IMG/VR virus record: IMGVR_UViG_3300046660_000488
Location: 372,001 to 436,000 of that record
DNA: 64,000 nucleotides
Reading direction: 5' to 3' (one strand)
The notes under the pieces were generated by a model. That model worked only from the letters and a program-made list of their open reading frames with translations, searched no databases and was not told where the DNA came from. Below are positions 3,779 to 64,000 of the stretch, in pieces. Position 1 is the first letter of the stretch, and every line of letters starts with the position of its first letter. A program made the translations under genes and the position numbers.

Positions 3779-4045
3779 CTAATTAAGCGATCCGTTTGTC
3801 TTCATGTGAGCAGCATGTTCAAGGGCTGCGAGGATCACCGCCGCAGCCTTGATCAGGTCTTCTTCAAACGCCTCAGCCTGTGGCTTAGTGTGCTTCCTCG
3901 AAGAGCCCCGAAGACAGTAACTTGCCGCAATGGCGAGCCAGTCATTCGGGGTATTCTTCGTGTCCCACTCCGAGCCGGGCAGGTTGAACTGACGCTCGCG
4001 CTCCGCGAGGATTTCAGCGATGATTTCCTCGCGGCGCGCGGTCAT
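3779..4045 (-). CDS. MazG-like all-alpha NTP pyrophosphatase-like protein
   Basis: Pattern EILAERERQ...NDW...EEDLIKAAAV..AALE. Confidence 0.55.
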   Translation of the reverse strand: MTARREEIIAEILAERERQFNLPGSEWDTKNTPNDWLAIAASYCLRGSSRKHTKPQAEAFEEDLIKAAAVILAALEHAAHMKTNGSLN

Positions 4046-4046
4046 C

Positions 4047-4877
4047 TTACTTCGACGCCTTGCGGGGGCGGGTCGCCTTCACCGGCACTTCCACGACAGC
4101 TTCGGCGGCCTTGCGGGTCCGAGTTGCCTTGGCGGGTGCGGATTGAGCCACCGGCGCGGTCTGGGCGACGCGCTTGGTCGGCGCCGCGCGTTCCGGCTGC
4201 GGACGCAGTTGGGGTGCGTACTCGTAGGCCTTCTCGCGCTTCTGCTGGGCGGCGAATTCCAGATCGGACGCTTCCATCAGCAGGTTGTTGGCGATGCCGA
4301 CCGCACGTTCGTTCACGCCAGCGCGTTGGTTCTGGGCGTGCGGGTTGAACTTGTCAGCTTCTTCGTACTGCTGGGCGCGGGCCTTGGGGGCGACTTGCGC
4401 GTACAGGCTACCGACCGGGTCGATCTCGGGTTCCGGCTCAGCGACGGGATAGCCCTCGAAGCCTTCGTAGATCGACATGGCGTCGCCGTTGTAGCTCGGG
4501 GCGACCGGCTCTTCGGGGATGTAACGGCCCATCTTCTCCAGCACTTCGCGGAGCGGGAAGCTGCGCGACGGAAGCGGGAGCATCGACACTTGGTCGATGT
4601 GGATGGGTTGCAGCAGGTTGTTGTGGTGCAGGAACTTCAGCACGCTCAGCGTGCCGTCCGGCATCATCCGGGCGTCCAGAACCGTACCGAGGTCGGTGGC
4701 GGCTTGGCCTTCGCGGCTTTGCAGGATTTGCATCATGTACTGCTGGAAGCGATCCGGCAGGCTGTCAGTGGAAACCACCAGAGCGTGGTCTTCGCGCTGG
4801 GGGATTTGCATGAAGATGACCGCGTAGCGCTGGTCAGTCCGGGCGTGGCGTGCGACGTGTCGCAGAGGTGTAGACAT
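4047..4877 (-). CDS. conserved jumbo-phage hypothetical protein with a basic tail
   Basis: Long ORF, GGAG RBS, typical codon usage. Confidence 0.75.
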   Translation of the reverse strand: MSTPLRHVARHARTDQRYAVIFMQIPQREDHALVVSTDSLPDRFQQYMMQILQSREGQAATDLGTVLDARMMPDGTLSVLKFLHHNNLLQPIHIDQVSMLPLPSRSFPLREVLEKMGRYIPEEPVAPSYNGDAMSIYEGFEGYPVAEPEPEIDPVGSLYAQVAPKARAQQYEEADKFNPHAQNQRAGVNERAVGIANNLLMEASDLEFAAQQKREKAYEYAPQLRPQPERAAPTKRVAQTAPVAQSAPAKATRTRKAAEAVVEVPVKATRPRKASK

Positions 4878-53731: not shown

Positions 53732-54319
53732 GTGAGCACACTACAAAATATGGGTGTTCCGCTTGGCGGTGGCACTGGTCGTGGCGGTCTTCTGATGCCG
53801 AAGACCCGTCAGAAGTTCCGCGTGCGGGTCACCAATTTCGGTCCGGTCAACGGTGGTCTTGAACTGACGCAGCAAGTCGTCAGCGTCGGTCGCCCGTCCG
53901 TCTCGATGTCCGGCCAAGCCGTCCACTCGTACAACTCTATCGGCTACTACGCCGGTAAGGCCGAGTGGTCCACGCTTGATCTGACGGTTCGCGACGACAT
54001 CACCAACGCGGTCTCCAAGCTGGTGGGTCACCAGCTTCAGAAGCAAATGAACTTCTATCAGCAGACTTCTGCTGAAGCAGGTTCCAACTACAAATTCCAG
54101 ATGTTCCTTGAAACGCTGGATGGCGGCAACGACACCGTCACCGAGCAGTGGATCATCGAAGGCTGCTTCCTCGAATCGATCAACTACGGCGACTTCGCCT
54201 ACGATTCGTCGGACGCCCTGACGATCCAGATGACGGTTCGCTACGACAACGCCACGCAGCAGGGTGGCCTGATGCCGGTCAACCCGCAACTCGGCGTTGG
54301 CAAGATGGTTGGTTCCTAA
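53732..54319 (+). CDS. tail tube protein (gp19-like)
   Basis: FRVR, YYAGKAEW, VRDD, W.IEGCF, YDNA; late motif at 53675. Confidence 0.9.
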   Translation: MSTLQNMGVPLGGGTGRGGLLMPKTRQKFRVRVTNFGPVNGGLELTQQVVSVGRPSVSMSGQAVHSYNSIGYYAGKAEWSTLDLTVRDDITNAVSKLVGHQLQKQMNFYQQTSAEAGSNYKFQMFLETLDGGNDTVTEQWIIEGCFLESINYGDFAYDSSDALTIQMTVRYDNATQQGGLMPVNPQLGVGKMVGS

Positions 54320-54333
54320 GACAGTAGGACGCA

Positions 54334-55734
54334 ATGCCCGACTTCATTAAGAGTCCTCGGCAGGCGACAACGGTTTTTGGCCTTGATGGTCAGTCCGTCC
54401 CGCGCAAGAAGAGCTTGTTCTATGTCCGCTTTCGGCGGGCAGACAACGCTCAAGCGGGACGGGCTGGCTGGCAAGACAATCTGGGTTTCATGGCGAAGTC
54501 GGTTGACCGACCTTCTGTCCAGCCCCAGATTGAAGAGCTTAACCAGTACGGCAAGAAGCGCCAAGTCACCACCGGAATCAAGAATCAACCCGCGCGGATC
54601 GTGTTGTATGACACGGCCGATAGCATGGCTATGCGTATGTGGGTGGAGTACAGCCGCTGGTACTTCGGCGAATACCGCCAAGACTCAGATGCGATGTGGG
54701 ACTACGATGTCACCACAGAAGAAATGTATGGCATGGATGAGGGTTTCGGCTTCACGCTGCGGAACTCGTCGTCGGATGCTATCGACCTCAACTCGCAATT
54801 CTTCTTCGACGCACTTGAGGTCTATCAAGTCTGGGGTGGATATTTCACCCAGTTTGACCTGATCAATCCCAAGATCAGCGCGTTCGACCCCGACGAACTT
54901 GACTATTCGGTCACCGAGCCATCCACGATCAGCGTCACGCTGAACTATGAGGCGATGATCCACCAGAACGGCGCCGCGCCGCAGCCGATCTCGTCTGATC
55001 CTCTTGTCGCATCGGTGTTCGGCGGTCTGTTCAACGGCAACACGTTCGATCCCGAGGGCGCTGCGTCCTCGAAGCCGCGACACGGCTACAATTTCACCGA
55101 CAAGGATGTGGCCCCCGCGCCGCTGTCCTTCCGGAACAAGACGCTCGGCCAGATCGTGGACAGCGCTCTGCACACCGCGACCGGGTCGCAAGGCGTTGGC
55201 TCGCTGGGCATCTTCGGCAATTTCAACTTCGGCGCGGCCACCGGCGTCAACACCGGCAGTCTGGCGGGCGACATTTCGTACCTCGCCACCGGAAACCCGG
55301 CGCTGGCATCGGTGCTGAACCAGACGGTCGGCCAAGCCGCGACGTCTGCCTCTTCGCGCATCCTGTCCACGGGGTCGTCGAACGTCGTCTCCGGCTATTC
55401 GTCCAGCAAGGTCGATACGGCCAAGAGCGCCCTGCTCGGCGCGGCGACGAACGTGTCCAACAAGTACGCCAATCAGTACGTCAACAACAACCTGTTGGGC
55501 GGCGTAGTCGCCGCTGGCGTCATTGAAGGCACACCCGCCACGGATCAGGTCTCGAAGACTTCGTCCGGCCTGTCCCTGAAGAGCATGGCTCTGGCGGTCA
55601 TCAACTCCAATCGCGCTCCGGTAAGCCAGATCGGCTTCAACCAAGTGACCCAGCTTACCCCCGTCGTTGCTGACAGCAACCCGGCCGGGTTCCTTCCCGC
55701 AGGTGTTCCGGACGTGAATTTTGACGAGGATTAG
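54334..55734 (+). CDS. baseplate tube-initiator/hub protein (gp48/gp54-like)
   Basis: Tube-fold N-terminus: KSVDRP, LNQYGKKR, LINPKIS.FD, L.YE. Confidence 0.7.
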   Translation: MPDFIKSPRQATTVFGLDGQSVPRKKSLFYVRFRRADNAQAGRAGWQDNLGFMAKSVDRPSVQPQIEELNQYGKKRQVTTGIKNQPARIVLYDTADSMAMRMWVEYSRWYFGEYRQDSDAMWDYDVTTEEMYGMDEGFGFTLRNSSSDAIDLNSQFFFDALEVYQVWGGYFTQFDLINPKISAFDPDELDYSVTEPSTISVTLNYEAMIHQNGAAPQPISSDPLVASVFGGLFNGNTFDPEGAASSKPRHGYNFTDKDVAPAPLSFRNKTLGQIVDSALHTATGSQGVGSLGIFGNFNFGAATGVNTGSLAGDISYLATGNPALASVLNQTVGQAATSASSRILSTGSSNVVSGYSSSKVDTAKSALLGAATNVSNKYANQYVNNNLLGGVVAAGVIEGTPATDQVSKTSSGLSLKSMALAVINSNRAPVSQIGFNQVTQLTPVVADSNPAGFLPAGVPDVNFDED

Positions 55735-59661: not shown

Positions 59662-60858
59662 TTGGTCGCGCACGAGAATAGCTGGTTTCTCGACTGCTCC
59701 CTGATCCTCGGGGACATCGGCCCCGACACCTACTACTATTACCAGAACGTCGATCCATACACGGATGACGTGATCGGCAACTATCGCAGCCCGCCGGGCA
59801 TGGTGTTCGACACCCACGGCGATAGCCTGTCGTATCAGGCGCTCATGATGGAAGCCCGGTTCACCGAGTGGCGCGCGGCCTTCCCCAAGGCCGCGTTGGG
59901 TGTCTCCGTGTCCAGTGTCGAGACCTTCGGCCATGTCCTACAAAATCACGTCAGTGAATTGGCGATTGGCGCCGTGAACCACGGCCACCGGCGCGTCACA
60001 GCGGAGGTGCGAGAGGCCAAGCACTTCAACCAGACCACGAAGGTCATGCGGCGGGCGATGAACAGGATCGCGGCCGACCTTCAGGGCCTCGACCGTGACA
60101 CCTTGCTTCGCATCGACGCCGAGCACACGGCCTACCTGCAATCGCGCCTGTACGAGCGCCCGCAGGACGTCGAGGGCATCCCGTTTTATCAGCGAGACCT
60201 GCGGCCGATCAAGAACGCCAAGGCCTTCATTCGCCGCGAGCAGAAGCATGCGCGCAGCATCATGAAGCGCAGCATGAAATTCCTCAGCGCCCTGATCGGC
60301 GACGACGCCACGCGGATGTTCGTGAGCGGCGACCGAATCAGGATTGAGGGCCAGCATTGCGTCTACGAAATCCATCGCACCGGCCGCATGGCCTATGAGC
60401 ACGGCGGCTCCGGCCTGAAGGTGTTCACCAAGGACGAAGACATCCACCTGTGCGACATCTGCATCTACACGCCGAACGTCCCGATCTTCGATCACGTCGC
60501 TGGGATCGTCATGCACATCAAGGCTGGTGAGGAAGACAAGATTCTGGAGATCGGCAACCCCTATAATCTCAGCGAGGCCGCCAAGCAGCAGGAATGGCTC
60601 GTTCCCTACCTGCCCAAGCCTCGTGTGCCTCAGCCGCCGGTGGAACAGCCGGACCGGGATTTCATGGGCATCCGCGCGGTCCCGTACTTTGGGGACCTGC
60701 CGCAGGTCTATCGCGGCGCTGACCGCGAGCAACGTCTGAGAACCATGCGGCATCTGATCGGCCGCCACCTATATGACGACCTTGGCCTTGAGCGCTTCGC
60801 GCTGGCCGGTCGTGTTGTGAAAGAACAAAGGGCGTTGGAACGTGTACGAGTGGCTTGA
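59662..60858 (+). CDS. hypothetical protein (start uncertain)
   Basis: Long ORF with LCDICIY..PIFDHVA...EE motif. Confidence 0.7.
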   Translation: MVAHENSWFLDCSLILGDIGPDTYYYYQNVDPYTDDVIGNYRSPPGMVFDTHGDSLSYQALMMEARFTEWRAAFPKAALGVSVSSVETFGHVLQNHVSELAIGAVNHGHRRVTAEVREAKHFNQTTKVMRRAMNRIAADLQGLDRDTLLRIDAEHTAYLQSRLYERPQDVEGIPFYQRDLRPIKNAKAFIRREQKHARSIMKRSMKFLSALIGDDATRMFVSGDRIRIEGQHCVYEIHRTGRMAYEHGGSGLKVFTKDEDIHLCDICIYTPNVPIFDHVAGIVMHIKAGEEDKILEIGNPYNLSEAAKQQEWLVPYLPKPRVPQPPVEQPDRDFMGIRAVPYFGDLPQVYRGADREQRLRTMRHLIGRHLYDDLGLERFALAGRVVKEQRALERVRVA

Positions 60859-61063
60859 TCCGGTCGCCGCCATCGACGATGTTCGAGGTCTTCGCGCCGA
60901 GCTTGCATCGGTCAAAGCCCAATTGAGGGAAGCGACCTACGAGCCTCGGCGTCAGAAAATCGAAAGCGCCCGTGCCCTCCGGTTCCTTCGGGACGTCAAG
61001 GGTCACAAGTTGTCGCCTAGACAAGAAGAGATCATTGCTATGTGGGCAGACGGTGAGCCCTAA
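60842..61063 (+). CDS. hypothetical protein
   Basis: Overlapping ORF at the end of the operon. Confidence 0.55.
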   Translation: MYEWLDPVAAIDDVRGLRAELASVKAQLREATYEPRRQKIESARALRFLRDVKGHKLSPRQEEIIAMWADGEP

Positions 61064-61073
61064 ATAAGGGATC

Positions 61074-62153
61074 ATGATCCCGACGAACCCTGCATATCTG
61101 ACAAGCAAGGAATACTTGCAGGCGACCAACCAGAGCCGCAAATGGCACGAAGGCCATGCGTACAATTGGTCGCTTGATCAGATCAACAACGGGTACGGCT
61201 CGTCCAACAAAAACACCTTCCCCAAGTTGCTTGGTCGCAAGATCATCAAGGGCCTGACTTTCGAGTTCCGTCAGAAGGACGAGAGCGAGGGTCCGATGAT
61301 CGGCGTCTGGAACGAAGAGGGCCAGAAGGTCGGCGGCACGCAGGACGAATGGGGCGCCATGCTCGTCTACGTCGCCAAGGAATACCGTGGCTTCGGCCTC
61401 GGCCCCATGCTCATCAAGATCGCACGCACGCTTGAGCCGATGAAGGACTCAGGTGGATTCACCGACGCGGGCCGCAACAACCTCGTCAAGGCACACCGCG
61501 AGTTCGTCCGCGACGCTCTGAAGAACGGGACTTACACCAAGCTGGTCCGCTCGGGTCAGATGTCCATCGAGCGCGTCAAGGAGATCGTGGACAGCGCGCA
61601 CCTGTCCATGCGTCCCAAGGCCGACACGGAAGACCTCAGCAGCAAGCCGCAGGACTGGCTGCTCTACGTCGGCGGCTACGGCGACTTCATCCTCTACGAC
61701 AAGAAACTGAAGAACCTGATCGGCCGCGATGACCGCGAGCATTTCCACGACCAGATGATCAAGGGCTACGTGCTGGTCCGCGAGCCGCGCGACGGCAAGG
61801 CGATCATCGTCCGCTTCGGTGGACAGAACGACAAGTTCAAGACCTTCATGATGACCTGCGCGATCTGGTGGGCGAACAAGGAAGGCGCGACCTTCGACGT
61901 GGACCCGGAAGACGTCAAGTACGTGGACAAGCGCTTCGCCAAGGTCTCACCCAAGCACAACATGCAGGTCGGCCACACGCGTTATCGCGTCACCGTGACC
62001 GGCGAAATCCCCAATTTCAACGACTTCGCAATGGTCGAGAAGCACTGGCGTAAGCAGAACGACCAGTACGACGAGTTCAAGAATTACATGATGGACTTGG
62101 CCAACAGCATCTACCAGCCTCAGCCGGTAGTAAAGGATCGTTGGGCGGCTTAA
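61074..62153 (+). CDS. GNAT-like domain late protein
   Basis: Acetyl-CoA motif VYVAKEYRGFGLG and FTDAG; TAAATA 7 nt upstream. Confidence 0.65.
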   Translation: MIPTNPAYLTSKEYLQATNQSRKWHEGHAYNWSLDQINNGYGSSNKNTFPKLLGRKIIKGLTFEFRQKDESEGPMIGVWNEEGQKVGGTQDEWGAMLVYVAKEYRGFGLGPMLIKIARTLEPMKDSGGFTDAGRNNLVKAHREFVRDALKNGTYTKLVRSGQMSIERVKEIVDSAHLSMRPKADTEDLSSKPQDWLLYVGGYGDFILYDKKLKNLIGRDDREHFHDQMIKGYVLVREPRDGKAIIVRFGGQNDKFKTFMMTCAIWWANKEGATFDVDPEDVKYVDKRFAKVSPKHNMQVGHTRYRVTVTGEIPNFNDFAMVEKHWRKQNDQYDEFKNYMMDLANSIYQPQPVVKDRWAA

Positions 62154-62190
62154 AATCGCAGTAAATTATGTTGTGTGCTAAGTTAATAGT

Positions 62191-62670
62191 ATGCACACAA
62201 TTCTTGAAAACATTGAAGTCGATTACGAGAAAAATCGCACGGATCGCATTTCCGGCGCTTCTGCTGGGTACGCGACTATCAAACGCATCACTCAGCCGTT
62301 CGCAGAGCGGTATGCTTTGAAGATTTGGCCGGACGAAAGCCTTCATGTCAATTCCAGATTTGAAGACATCCGTGGCCAGTCGGTGAAAGACCTGATCACG
62401 ACCAAGCTGAAAGCTCGCTGGACGTTCGAAGCTGCACAGGGAGCCGCGAGCACGACCGGACTTTCCGCAGCCGACATCGAAGAAGAGATCACCGCATTGC
62501 TCTACGAATTTCTGGCCAATGAGATCATCGTGATCCGTGATCAATTGCTTTCGGAAGGAAAGATCATGTGCCCATACCTTCCGATTTCGTCGTCGTCAGT
62601 CATCATCGACCCCGAGACATTCGAGCCTGTTGTGGCATTCACAACCAAATACGCGGTGATCAACGCATGA
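62191..62670 (+). CDS. miniature gp23 (major capsid)-like protein 1
   Basis: TTKLKARWTFEAAQ...DIEEEI.A.L...LANEI and CPYLP.SSSVIIDPETFEPVVAFTTKY. Confidence 0.75.
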   Translation: MHTILENIEVDYEKNRTDRISGASAGYATIKRITQPFAERYALKIWPDESLHVNSRFEDIRGQSVKDLITTKLKARWTFEAAQGAASTTGLSAADIEEEITALLYEFLANEIIVIRDQLLSEGKIMCPYLPISSSSVIIDPETFEPVVAFTTKYAVINA

Positions 62671-63155
62671 ACATGCCCTCATCTTTCGCAACGATCCAAG
62701 TGCTCGTGGACAACTTGATGCACTACATCAAGTTCATCGCCGAAAACGGCGTCCGGACTGAACCCAACAACGCCGCCGCAGCCAACAAGCTGTCGCTGGC
62801 CTATGCCGCGCGCCATGCGGAATCGCTGTTCCCTGATCCACGTCTCTACGTGAAGGACAAGCAGGTTCAGGGCAAGGACGTCGAAATCCTCACCCACCGT
62901 TTCTCCACCATCATGGAGTTCGAGGCGTTTCAGGATGACGTCACCCGGCGCGGGGAAGCCGCAGAGACAGAATTCCTGCATCAGCTATACGACGGCCTCG
63001 TCGTCGAGACTAAGGAACTGATCGCGCGCCATGCGGCTGAAGGCAAGATCGTCTGCCCGTACATCGTCGCCGGTTCGGCTGGTCCGGTGATCAGCCCAGA
63101 GACCTTCGAACCGTACATGCCGTTCTTCATCAAGTACGCTCTGATCGACGCCTAA
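62667..63155 (+). CDS. miniature gp23-like protein 2
   Basis: FEAFQD and CPYI...VISPETFEPYMPFFIKY; paralogue of the previous gene. Confidence 0.7.
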   Translation: MNMPSSFATIQVLVDNLMHYIKFIAENGVRTEPNNAAAANKLSLAYAARHAESLFPDPRLYVKDKQVQGKDVEILTHRFSTIMEFEAFQDDVTRRGEAAETEFLHQLYDGLVVETKELIARHAAEGKIVCPYIVAGSAGPVISPETFEPYMPFFIKYALIDA

Positions 63156-63226
63156 GCAGCGATAAAGCCTGATCTAATACGACTCCTCCGCGAATAAATT
63201 GGCTTCGCCACCTAAATACTTTGTAG

Positions 63227-64000
<774 letters not shown>

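What the first reader, a model, noticed from the sequence alone, without database searches (positions are those of the whole stretch)
62191..63155. Two tandem miniature major-capsid-protein homologues beside the terminase: possible immune decoys
Seen in sequence: two ~160-aa paralogues carry two gp23 signature segments (T.KL.ARWTFEAAQ...EI and CPY.P....DP.TFEP...F.TKY) separated by only about 15 aa. Established: in T4-type MCPs these segments flank the long A-domain region, so each protein looks like an isolated P-domain that cannot build a shell. Several defence systems (CapRel-SJ46, Lit) are triggered by MCP. There is no TAAATA directly upstream of the first gene. Inference: these may be non-structural decoys for capsid sensors, assembly modulators, or inhibitors of competing phages or satellites.
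Basis: partly seen in the sequence, partly recalled or inferred. Interest (0 to 1): 0.78.

Follow-up and report, generated by a model that had tools for sequence, protein, structure and literature searches.

The report
Truncated capsid-protein paralogues in a huge phage
Two neighbouring genes of a 578-kb phage encode shortened copies of its own major capsid protein that lack the central domain needed to build a shell, and they belong to a widespread, so far unnamed family whose role (most likely molecular mimicry of the capsid protein in some conflict) is untested.

Summary
Window 62191-62670 (159 aa) and 62667-63155 (162 aa) are paralogues. They keep two segments of the phage's own 403-aa T4-type major capsid protein (MCP): the strand plus spine helix, and the P-domain hairpin. 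About 14 residues join them where the MCP has its 132-residue A-domain. An AlphaFold2 model (pLDDT 92) aligns best with HK97-fold capsid proteins.

They are not unique. A search of 1.84 billion representative proteins found about 60 clusters of such "mini-MCPs", all unnamed. These are often tandem genes or fused doubles, with one triple. About a quarter carry twin-arginine-type export signals. Some sit next to complementary MCP fragments and portal fragments.

The genes are accessory. A complete mini occurs in 2 of 11 related huge-phage genomes, and the family evolves far faster than the MCP. In this phage both proteins lack signal peptides. They probably ride on a late transcript that starts 1.1 kb upstream.

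Its functional idea (decoy, assembly modulator or competitor inhibitor) is plausible but untested, and the exported relatives do not fit a purely cytoplasmic decoy. My best guess, at about 0.35, is a soluble, non-polymerising heterodimeric mimic of the MCP.

The parts
61060..61066 (+). CTAAATA late-promoter-like motif, 7 nt before the ATG of the upstream gene. It is the likely start of a transcript covering the 359-aa gene, mini1 and mini2.
   Evidence: CTAAATA occurs 94 times in the genome (both strands); CTAAATAC occurs 44 times against about 8 expected. It mostly lies just upstream of ORF starts. No + strand terminator-like site was found in 60800-63400. Co-transcription is inferred.
61074..62153 (+). 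Upstream 359-aa gene of unknown function, with a weak GNAT-like hit. It is co-oriented and ends 38 nt before mini1.
   Evidence: PHROG 29287, E 2.5e-44, unknown function; Pfam Acetyltransf_7 below cut-off. It is not homologous to the genes upstream of TerL in Phosso or upstream of the mini pair in L209.
62191..62670 (+). mini1, a 159-aa MCP derivative without the A-domain (pI 4.9).
   Evidence: Pfam Gp23 39.9 bits. BLASTP to own MCP. AF2 pLDDT 92, pTM 0.86. VIA-align best rows are HK97-fold MCPs, with T4 gp24 at Z 6.6 over 128 aligned residues. pI.
62398..62526 (+). mini1 residues 70-112: E-loop return strand plus start of the spine helix, homologous to MCP 172-211.
   Evidence: 53% identity to own MCP. 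T4 gp23 253-307 matches the same profile positions. In the model: strand 69-78, helices 80-89 and 93-121.
62527..62568 (+). mini1 residues 113-126: end of the spine helix and the short turn that replaces the 132-residue A-domain.
   Evidence: Alignments A1, A2 and A4. The junction has the same length in mini1, mini2 and the G001 homologue. A Gly at this turn is conserved in 68% of the family.
62569..62661 (+). mini1 residues 127-157: long P-domain beta-hairpin, homologous to MCP 344-374.
   Evidence: 65% identity to own MCP. Model strands 124-139 and 146-158. These are the most conserved family positions: P128, Y129, P141, T143, F144, P146, F150, Y154.
62667..63155 (+). mini2, a 162-aa paralogue of mini1 (pI 5.2). 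Its start overlaps the mini1 stop (ATGA).
   Evidence: 33% identity to mini1, E 2e-21. Hairpin match to own MCP, E 3e-8. The family HMM covers positions 3-155. The conserved N-terminal motif lies at residues 10-16, so the 145-aa gene call starting at M18 (P0003) is probably too short.
63054..63149 (+). mini2 residues 130-161: P-domain hairpin.
   Evidence: 41% identity to MCP 344-375.
63212..63218 (+). CTAAATA late-promoter-like motif of the terminase gene.
63275..64000 (+). Large terminase subunit, N-terminal part. The gene runs off the window and is 531 aa in the genome.
   Evidence: Pfam Terminase_6N, E 7e-19. PHROG terminase large subunit, E 3.7e-127 for the full protein.

Best explanation
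What it is (confidence about 0.9). mini1 and mini2 are two translationally coupled genes of a previously unnamed family of 'mini-MCPs'. These are derivatives of the T4-type (Gp23, HK97-fold) major capsid protein of huge phages. They lost the first part of the propeptide, the first E-loop strand with its insertion, the whole A-domain and the C-terminal end. They kept two N-terminal helices, the E-loop return strand, the spine helix and the long P-domain hairpin. The shared deletion junction points to a single origin.

How it most likely works (inferred, confidence about 0.35). The two proteins form a soluble, acidic heterodimer, as suggested by the fused double-domain homologues. Without the A-domain this dimer cannot build capsomers. 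It is made together with the virion proteins. It acts as a non-polymerising mimic of the N-arm/P-domain face of unassembled MCP and occupies a partner that would otherwise bind the real MCP. The most probable partner is a host protein that senses or attacks newly made capsid protein, which would make the pair a counter-defence decoy. The genes are accessory, so the benefit would depend on the host.
For: Homology and architecture.

Fold: the AF2 model has pLDDT 92. The best VIA-align rows are HK97-fold capsid proteins. In a search of 48,161 representative chains without the Foldseek prefilter, 49 of the 50 best rows for the fused homologue are HK97-fold capsid or encapsulin proteins.

Family: 525 hits were found. 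About 60 cluster representatives of 128-264 aa match the profile in one continuous stretch across the junction.

Pairing: tandem pairs occur in this phage and in L209, L210 and L214. There are eight fused doubles and one triple. The fused double folds with pTM 0.77.

Accessory and fast-evolving: a complete mini occurs in only 2 of 11 related huge-phage genomes. None lies within 5 kb of TerL in 80 relatives. Median end branch is 1.07 for minis against 0.04-0.07 for MCPs.

Late co-expression is plausible. Neither protein has a signal peptide, and the genome holds no credible Tat substrate. A characterised capsid sensor recognises mainly the MCP P-domain. One mini cluster lies about 5 kb from an Acb1 anti-CBASS gene.
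Against: No binding partner has been shown. The one complex prediction gave no answer. Heterodimerisation is inferred only from gene order, fusions and the pTM of a fused homologue; I could not inspect the coordinates.

About a quarter of family members carry twin-arginine-type export signals (Pfam TAT_signal hits are below threshold). That places them outside the cytoplasm, where known capsid sensors do not act.

For sensors that are activated by binding, such as CapRel and Avs, a mimic might trigger rather than block. The minis do not track a particular MCP lineage. Promoter context differs among homologues: some have sigma-70-like motifs and others have no late motif. No defence or anti-defence family matches.
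Confidence: 0.35

Rival explanations
1. Assembly modulators. The mini dimer binds the phage's own MCP, scaffold or prohead protease through the retained propeptide motif, N-arm helix and P-domain. It would transiently cap or chaperone MCP, or tune nucleation, size or maturation of a very large head. Signal-bearing relatives might tether such complexes to the inner membrane.
For: The minis keep the N-terminal motif that in the MCP lies in the propeptide, conserved at 61-84% across the family. They lie in a morphogenesis region with sheath, tube, head-completion protein and TerL, with a late-type promoter upstream. Some of the best structural matches are to procapsid-state MCPs. The triple-domain homologue sits among baseplate and fibre genes.
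Against: Nine of 11 related genomes lack a complete mini, and their MCPs are 70-89% identical to this one. The function is therefore not needed for assembly as such. Divergence is very fast compared with the MCP. Many homologues lie in arrays of small accessory genes. Exported members cannot meet proheads unless export is abortive.
Confidence: 0.2
2. An exapted binding module whose present function has nothing to do with capsids. The MCP-derived fold is reused as a stable dimeric scaffold for another task. In relatives with signals this task lies in the cell envelope (for example superinfection exclusion or lysis control). In this phage it would be cytoplasmic.
For: 15 of 60 cluster representatives have twin-arginine-type signals, scattered over the tree. 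Signal-bearing and signal-less minis are paired in L210 and L214, as expected for co-export of a folded heterodimer. There are family-specific conserved positions absent from MCPs, namely the ELFP motif and the junction Gly. Genomic contexts vary.
Against: The residues conserved most strongly are the same ones conserved in MCPs. The exported clusters also hold complementary MCP fragments and a portal fragment, which suggests that likeness to virion proteins is itself the point. The two proteins of this window have no signal.
Confidence: 0.2
3. Weapons against co-infecting phages or satellites. The minis would be dominant-negative fragments that poison capsid assembly of related competitors, or sponges for satellite-encoded capsid-redirecting proteins.
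For: The distribution is accessory and patchy and the evolution is fast. The retained interfaces are those used between MCP subunits (established for HK97-fold capsids; inference here).
Against: The MCPs of this clade are so alike (70-89% identity) that a poison would hit the producer as well. No immunity partner is evident. Exported members do not fit.
Confidence: 0.12
4. Minor or decoration proteins of the virion that dock on the MCP lattice through P-domain contacts.
For: They lie next to structural genes and a late promoter. Decoration proteins such as Hoc and Soc are also dispensable and patchy (established knowledge).
Against: There is no similarity to any decoration or virion family in Pfam or PHROGs. 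Export signals in a quarter of the family are incompatible with a virion role for those members. The ribosome-binding sites look weaker than that of the MCP (sequence; a weak argument). No cultured phage with a virion proteome carries a clear member.
Confidence: 0.08
5. Functionless remnants of partial duplications of the MCP gene.
For: Other short ORFs with MCP or portal fragments are scattered in these genomes, and some contain stops.
Against: Both ORFs are intact, of matching length and translationally coupled, at only 33% identity. The family is large, with conserved positions and a confidently predicted compact fold.
Confidence: 0.03

Closest known systems
T4 gp23 / gp24 (Pfam PF07068 Gp23; HK97-fold major capsid and vertex proteins)
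   Same: There is clear sequence homology in the E-loop return strand, spine helix and P-domain hairpin (T4 gp23 253-307 and 450-479). The order of elements is collinear. The predicted fold aligns best to gp24 and other HK97-fold proteins.
   Different: The minis have no A-domain, no first E-loop strand or insertion, and no C-terminal strand. They are 159-162 aa instead of 400-520 aa. They are accessory and fast-evolving, often paired or fused, and some relatives carry export signals. gp24 is a full-length paralogue that forms the pentameric vertices; the minis cannot do that (inference).
Phage counter-defence proteins that work by mimicry or sequestration (Ocr DNA mimic; Tad/Acb2 signal sponges)
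   Same: Possible mode of action only: a small, acidic, abundant-enough phage protein that occupies a host immune component. They share the accessory, patchy and fast-evolving character.
   Different: No homology and no experimental link. The known examples mimic DNA or bind nucleotides. A decoy made from the phage's own capsid protein did not turn up in my literature searches.
Small capsid-binding proteins of satellites and phages (P4 Sid, SaPI CpmB/Ccm, PLE TcaP; decoration proteins Soc, gpD)
   Same: These are small proteins that act on HK97-fold lattices. They are candidate analogues for an assembly-modulating or decorating role.
   Different: They are unrelated in sequence and fold and are not derived from the MCP itself. 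No evidence shows that the minis bind a lattice.
T4 gp16 small terminase (by position upstream of the large terminase, about 160 aa)
   Same: Gene position and size only.
   Different: There is no terminase small-subunit match in Pfam or PHROGs, and the fold is HK97-like. The relative Phosso has an annotated small terminase near its MCP gene and no mini before TerL.

Membership tests
Pfam PF07068 Gp23 (T4-type major capsid protein) | Sequence match above the curated gathering score | tested here: met
   mini1 scores 39.9 bits against a cut-off of 24.4. mini2 alone scores 14.5 bits (below), but it is a clear paralogue of mini1.
Pfam PF07068 Gp23 (T4-type major capsid protein) | Complete HK97-fold architecture including the A-domain (profile positions about 190-315) | tested here: not met
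   Only profile positions about 147-186 and 318-354 match. 14 residues replace the 132 residues of the own MCP. The AF2 model has no A-domain. The minis are homologues of the MCP, not MCPs.
Pfam PF07068 Gp23 (T4-type major capsid protein) | Forms capsomers and is the main virion protein | not testable with these tools
   The genome has a separate full-length MCP next to a scaffold-like gene. Incapacity of the minis to form capsomers is inferred from the missing A-domain.
HK97 fold (structural class) | N-arm, spine helix and P-domain sheet superposable on solved capsid proteins | tested here: met
   T4 gp24 gives Z 6.6 with 128 of 159 residues aligned. P22, HK97 prohead, phi29 and P4 follow at Z 5-6. 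49 of the 50 best rows of a wide search with the fused homologue are HK97-fold proteins. The Z values are moderate; the sequence homology carries the argument.
Mini-MCP family (defined here) | One continuous profile match running from the strand and spine helix into the hairpin across the short junction, in a protein or domain of about 130-200 aa | tested here: met
   mini1 covers profile 1-156. mini2 covers 7-156 in its database record P0003 and positions 3-155 of the larger family model in the genome. About 60 further cluster representatives do the same.
Mini-MCP family (defined here) | Occurs as an adjacent pair or as a fused multi-domain protein | tested here: met
   The window pair has a 4-nt overlap. 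The same holds for L209, L210 and L214, eight fused doubles and one triple. The G001 homologue is single.
Twin-arginine (Tat) exported proteins | N-terminal RR motif, an uncharged h-region and an AxA-like site | tested here: not met
   mini1 and mini2 have none, and the own genome holds no credible candidate. 15 of 60 family representatives do have one by a rule-based scan. Pfam TAT_signal hits are below threshold.
Anti-defence decoys or inhibitors | Binds and neutralises a host immune sensor or effector | not testable with these tools
   No PADLOC or NCBIfam match. Only circumstantial support exists.
Small terminase subunit | Match to a small-terminase family | tested here: not met
   No such match in Pfam or PHROGs, and the predicted fold is HK97-like.
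Capsid decoration / cement proteins | Homology to a known decoration family, or presence on virions | tested here: inconclusive
   No homology was found. Virion presence cannot be tested. No clear member exists in cultured phages with proteomes.

The most novel reading that the evidence does not exclude
Huge T4-type phages may carry a repertoire of non-assembling fragments of their most conserved virion proteins. The fragment types seen are:
- the MCP N-arm/P-domain module (the minis);
- the complementary A-domain module;
- the N-arm (probably Gol-region) segment;
- a 45-residue portal motif.

These fragments stay in the cytoplasm or are exported as folded complexes by the Tat pathway. They would serve as molecular mimics that blunt or misdirect host pattern recognition of capsid and portal proteins. 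mini1 and mini2 would be the cytoplasmic, late-expressed version in this phage.
Probability: 0.2. Interest if true: 0.9.

Novelty: new variant of a known kind. Interest (0 to 1): 0.72.

Why it matters
If the family is what it seems, capsid genes of huge phages have repeatedly given rise to small, soluble, non-assembling derivatives kept as accessory genes. That offers a defined, testable set of proteins for three questions: how bacteria sense capsid proteins and how phages answer, which parts of an HK97-fold protein can fold on their own, and why a phage would export pieces of its capsid and portal to the periplasm. It also matters for annotation. These genes score as 'Gp23' and could be miscalled as capsid genes or as fragments.

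Tried and rejected
- **Word-index search:** mini1 found only itself.
- **IMG/VR pattern scan:** a scan with mini1 found nothing.
- **Cultured phages:** tblastn returned only full MCPs. The family HMM on Phosso, SCTP-2, PA5oct, XacN1 and Atu_ph07 gave only full MCPs plus two weak fragments.
- **Synteny:** there is no mini within 5 kb of TerL in 80 IMG/VR relatives. The upstream genes are not conserved.
- **Complex prediction:** mini1 plus mini2 gave no answer (single-sequence model, pLDDT under 50). It counts neither way.
- **ESM Atlas:** the stored model is poor (pLDDT 0.41) and the feature hits are uninformative.
- **Foldseek against PDB:** only the 36-residue hairpin matched, not significantly. 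HU/IHF-like rows appeared at very low probability and were rejected; the proteins are acidic.
- **Small-terminase idea:** raised by gene position and rejected.
- **Tracking of the cognate MCP:** partners in one genome do not share an MCP-similarity profile more than non-partners do (p about 0.42). Nearly all minis are closest to the huge-phage MCP type. The MCP set was biased by how it was collected.
- **Tree:** it is poorly resolved, so orthology of first and second genes could not be settled.
- **Other attempts:** Only the source rhizosphere sample holds the sequence, so I laid no reads.

Full report
**Observation.** The mini2 start overlaps the mini1 stop in ATGA. They are paralogues, 33% identical over 132 residues, E 2e-21. 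Pfam Gp23 matches mini1 above its curated cut-off (39.9 against 24.4 bits) in two stretches, and matches mini2 weakly. PHROG 138, 'major head protein', agrees. The gene that follows at 63275 is the large terminase.

**The genome.** The window is bases 372001-436000 of a 578,292-bp IMG/VR virus record with direct terminal repeats. Its GC content is 59%, and only a rhizosphere metagenome holds the sequence in full. The record has one full-length T4-type MCP of 403 aa at 336004-337215, next to a scaffold-like coiled-coil gene. Relatives by terminase and MCP are huge phages of 415-608 kb in IMG/VR, together with the cultured phages Phosso, Atu_ph07, XacN1, SCTP-2 and PA5oct. MCPs within this clade are 69-89% identical.

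**Anatomy.**
- mini1 residues 70-112 align with MCP 172-211 (53% identity), and residues 127-157 with MCP 344-374 (65% identity). Fourteen residues replace the 132 residues of the MCP's A-domain.
- mini2 shows the same hairpin match.
- In T4 gp23 the same two profile segments fall at residues 253-307 and 450-479.
- Multiple alignments suggest the minis are collinear with the MCP from its residue 37 onward. The mini N-terminus (MHTILEN) lines up with METILDN in the MCP propeptide, followed by a diverged copy of the N-arm helix. This N-terminal correspondence rests on MAFFT alignments and on the structural alignment below, not on a significant score of its own.
- The junction between spine helix and hairpin has the same length in mini1, mini2 and the one homologue in the closest relative. 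This points to a single deletion event.

**Structure.** With an alignment of 62 family members, AlphaFold2 gives a confident model of mini1: pLDDT 92, pTM 0.86. It has helices 2-18 and 24-45, a strand at 69-78, helices 80-89 and 93-121 (the spine), and a long hairpin at 124-139 and 146-158.

Foldseek finds only the hairpin, because the missing A-domain breaks the alignment. VIA-align ranks HK97-fold capsid proteins first. T4 gp24 gives Z 6.6 with 128 residues aligned over chain 13-384. P22 procapsid, HK97 prohead I and II, phi29 and P4 follow at Z 5-6.

An independent wide search used the model of a fused two-domain homologue. It returns HK97-fold capsid or encapsulin proteins in 49 of its 50 best rows out of 48,161 chains. 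The Z values are moderate, but together with the sequence homology the fold assignment is safe. The protein is an HK97-fold protein without its A-domain.

**A family, not an oddity.** A profile of mini1, mini2 and the G001 homologue was searched against 1.84 billion representative proteins and gave 525 hits. Among the best 150, about 60 cluster representatives of 128-264 aa match in one continuous stretch across the junction. Full MCPs match in two stretches far apart.
- Eight representatives are fused doubles and one is a triple.
- All that carry a source name are 'hypothetical protein'.
- Adjacent pairs recur in L209, L210 and L214. In L209 the pair has a 4-nt overlap and lies just upstream of gp32 and UvsX, as in the wider neighbourhood of this window.
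- The fused double P0004 folds with pLDDT 83 and pTM 0.77. That pTM is hard to reach unless the two domains pack in a defined way. I could not inspect the coordinates.
- The direct complex prediction for mini1 plus mini2 gave no answer.

**Accessory and fast-evolving.** The family HMM finds a complete mini in only 2 of 11 related huge-phage genomes. Those two are this one, with two copies, and its nearest relative G001, with one copy at another position. Eight of the ten relatives are at least 90% complete. No mini lies near TerL in 80 relatives. In a poorly resolved tree the minis have median end branches of 1.07 substitutions per site, against 0.04-0.07 for MCPs. Nearly all minis are closest to the huge-phage MCP type, and partners in one genome do not share a particular MCP affinity. 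This fits one origin followed by free divergence.

**The unexpected part.** Fifteen of 60 representatives start with a twin-arginine-type signal: an RR motif, an uncharged stretch and an AxA-like end. Pfam's TAT_signal model scores them below threshold.

In L210 and L214 such minis sit in clusters with other signal-bearing pieces of virion proteins. These are MCP derivatives that keep the N-arm and A-domain but lack the spine helix and hairpin (the exact complement of a mini), a piece with spine helix plus A-domain, and a 64-82-aa protein holding positions 188-234 of the T4 portal profile. Each signal-bearing mini is followed by a signal-less one. The neighbours are ribonucleotide reductase, glutaredoxin and a SegE-like endonuclease, with Acb1 about 5 kb away.

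The own genome has no credible Tat substrate, so mini1 and mini2 should be cytoplasmic. It does hold related oddities:
- a 233-aa ORF with a weak match to the spine helix and A-domain;
- two ORFs carrying the same portal motif.

**Expression.** CTAAATA is strongly over-represented: 94 sites in the genome, and 44 for CTAAATAC against about 8 expected. It lies just upstream of ORF starts, like a T4-type late promoter. One copy sits 7 nt before the ATG of the 359-aa gene at 61074, and another lies before TerL. None lies in the 38-nt gap before mini1. No sigma-70-like promoter and no + strand terminator-like site was found in 60800-63400. The minis are therefore probably late genes co-transcribed with the upstream gene; this is inferred. 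Homologues elsewhere have other upstream contexts.

**Mechanism.** Four things are shown:
- descent from the MCP;
- loss of the A-domain;
- a compact predicted fold;
- the character of the family, which is large, paired, accessory and fast-evolving.

The rest is inferred. Without the A-domain, which forms the centre of every HK97-type capsomer (established knowledge), the proteins cannot build a shell. Pairing would cover the face that normally packs on the A-domain.

Close relatives with nearly the same MCP do without these genes, so they are not needed for assembly as such. That, together with the evolutionary mode, favours a conditional conflict-type role. The most economical version is a soluble mimic of the N-arm/P-domain face of unassembled MCP that occupies a host factor. 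CapRelSJ46 is reported to recognise chiefly the P-domain of its trigger MCP (10.1101/2022.05.30.493996), so such a surface is a real immune target.

I put this at about 0.35. The exported relatives are not explained by it. A mimic may activate sensors that fire on binding. Nothing was measured. The rivals, with my estimates, are an assembly modulator (0.2), an exapted module with an unrelated, partly periplasmic function (0.2), a weapon against competitors or satellites (0.12), a minor virion protein (0.08) and junk (0.03).

**Comparison with what is known.** The minis are homologues of Gp23 but fail the family's architectural definition. They are not small terminases despite their position. 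They match no defence or anti-defence model. Literature searches for truncated capsid paralogues, capsid decoys and Tat-exported capsid proteins found nothing relevant. Absence from that library is not proof of novelty.

I rate the finding as a new variant of a known kind: a domain-loss derivative of the MCP that has become a family of its own. If the mimicry reading is right, it could turn out to be categorically new.

Noticed in passing
whole genome G000; in the window e.g. 61060-61066 and 63212-63218: CTAAATA(C) is strongly over-represented and sits upstream of ORF starts. In many cases only 4-6 nt separate it from the ATG, which would give leaderless or nearly leaderless late mRNAs. Many of these genes begin with MR(D/E)(L/F)I, suggesting a multi-copy gene family.
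   Followed up: partly
G000:C1:34508-35209 (L003:1384-2085, + strand): A 233-aa ORF with a weak Pfam Gp23 match to profile positions 158-306 (spine helix plus A-domain; 20.7 bits, below cut-off). It has the same architecture as a signal-bearing 247-aa protein in L210. It may be a second kind of MCP fragment in this phage.
   Followed up: partly
G000:C1:532381-532959 (+, 192 aa) and G000:C1:154408-154671 (-, 87 aa): Two short ORFs carry the same conserved portal motif (Portal_T4 profile 189-234; 34.5 and 16.9 bits) as the small portal-fragment proteins next to mini-MCPs in L210 and L214. The full portal is at 330544-331959.
   Followed up: partly
L210:3892-7804 and L214:4972-6977 (metagenome contigs): Clusters of four to six adjacent genes encode pieces of MCP (A-domain type, spine plus A-domain type, mini type) and of portal. 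Most have twin-arginine-type signals, and each signal-bearing mini is followed by a signal-less one. The neighbours are ribonucleotide reductase, glutaredoxin and a SegE-like GIY-YIG gene, with Acb1 about 5 kb away. I have no explanation for exporting capsid and portal pieces.
   Followed up: partly
relatives G001, G003, G004, G005, G007, G009, G010 (e.g. L090:1420-1995, L096:1486-1932, L197, L198, L200): ORFs of 137-211 aa contain only the N-arm segment of the MCP (Pfam Gp23 profile about 3-49; own MCP 57-107) fused to unrelated sequence. This is the most conserved part of the first quarter of gp23, which in T4 is described as the Gol region that binds EF-Tu (PMC3014915). I did not verify the residue correspondence.
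   Followed up: partly
L138:4296-4721 (-), L140:3367-3729 (-) and 3888-4271 (-): In two relatives, short ORFs on the opposite strand just downstream of the MCP gene carry MCP hairpin or N-arm segments.
   Followed up: no
window 62191-62667: mini1 has 51% GC against 59% for the genome and 58% for mini2.
   Followed up: no
window 62667-63155: The database gene call for mini2 (P0003, 145 aa) starts at Met18 and cuts off the N-terminal motif conserved in the family. The ATG at 62667 that overlaps the mini1 stop is the more likely start.
   Followed up: partly
window 53732-55734: A tail tube gene (195 aa) is followed by a 466-aa paralogue with a tube domain at its N-terminus. Tail sheath (978 aa) and a head-completion protein lie next to them.
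   Followed up: no
L202:3260-3751 (G000 438260-438751); L209:1605-1832; L228:2719-2913: A DUF4170 protein occurs within a few kb of mini-MCP genes in three unrelated contexts. This may be chance.
   Followed up: no
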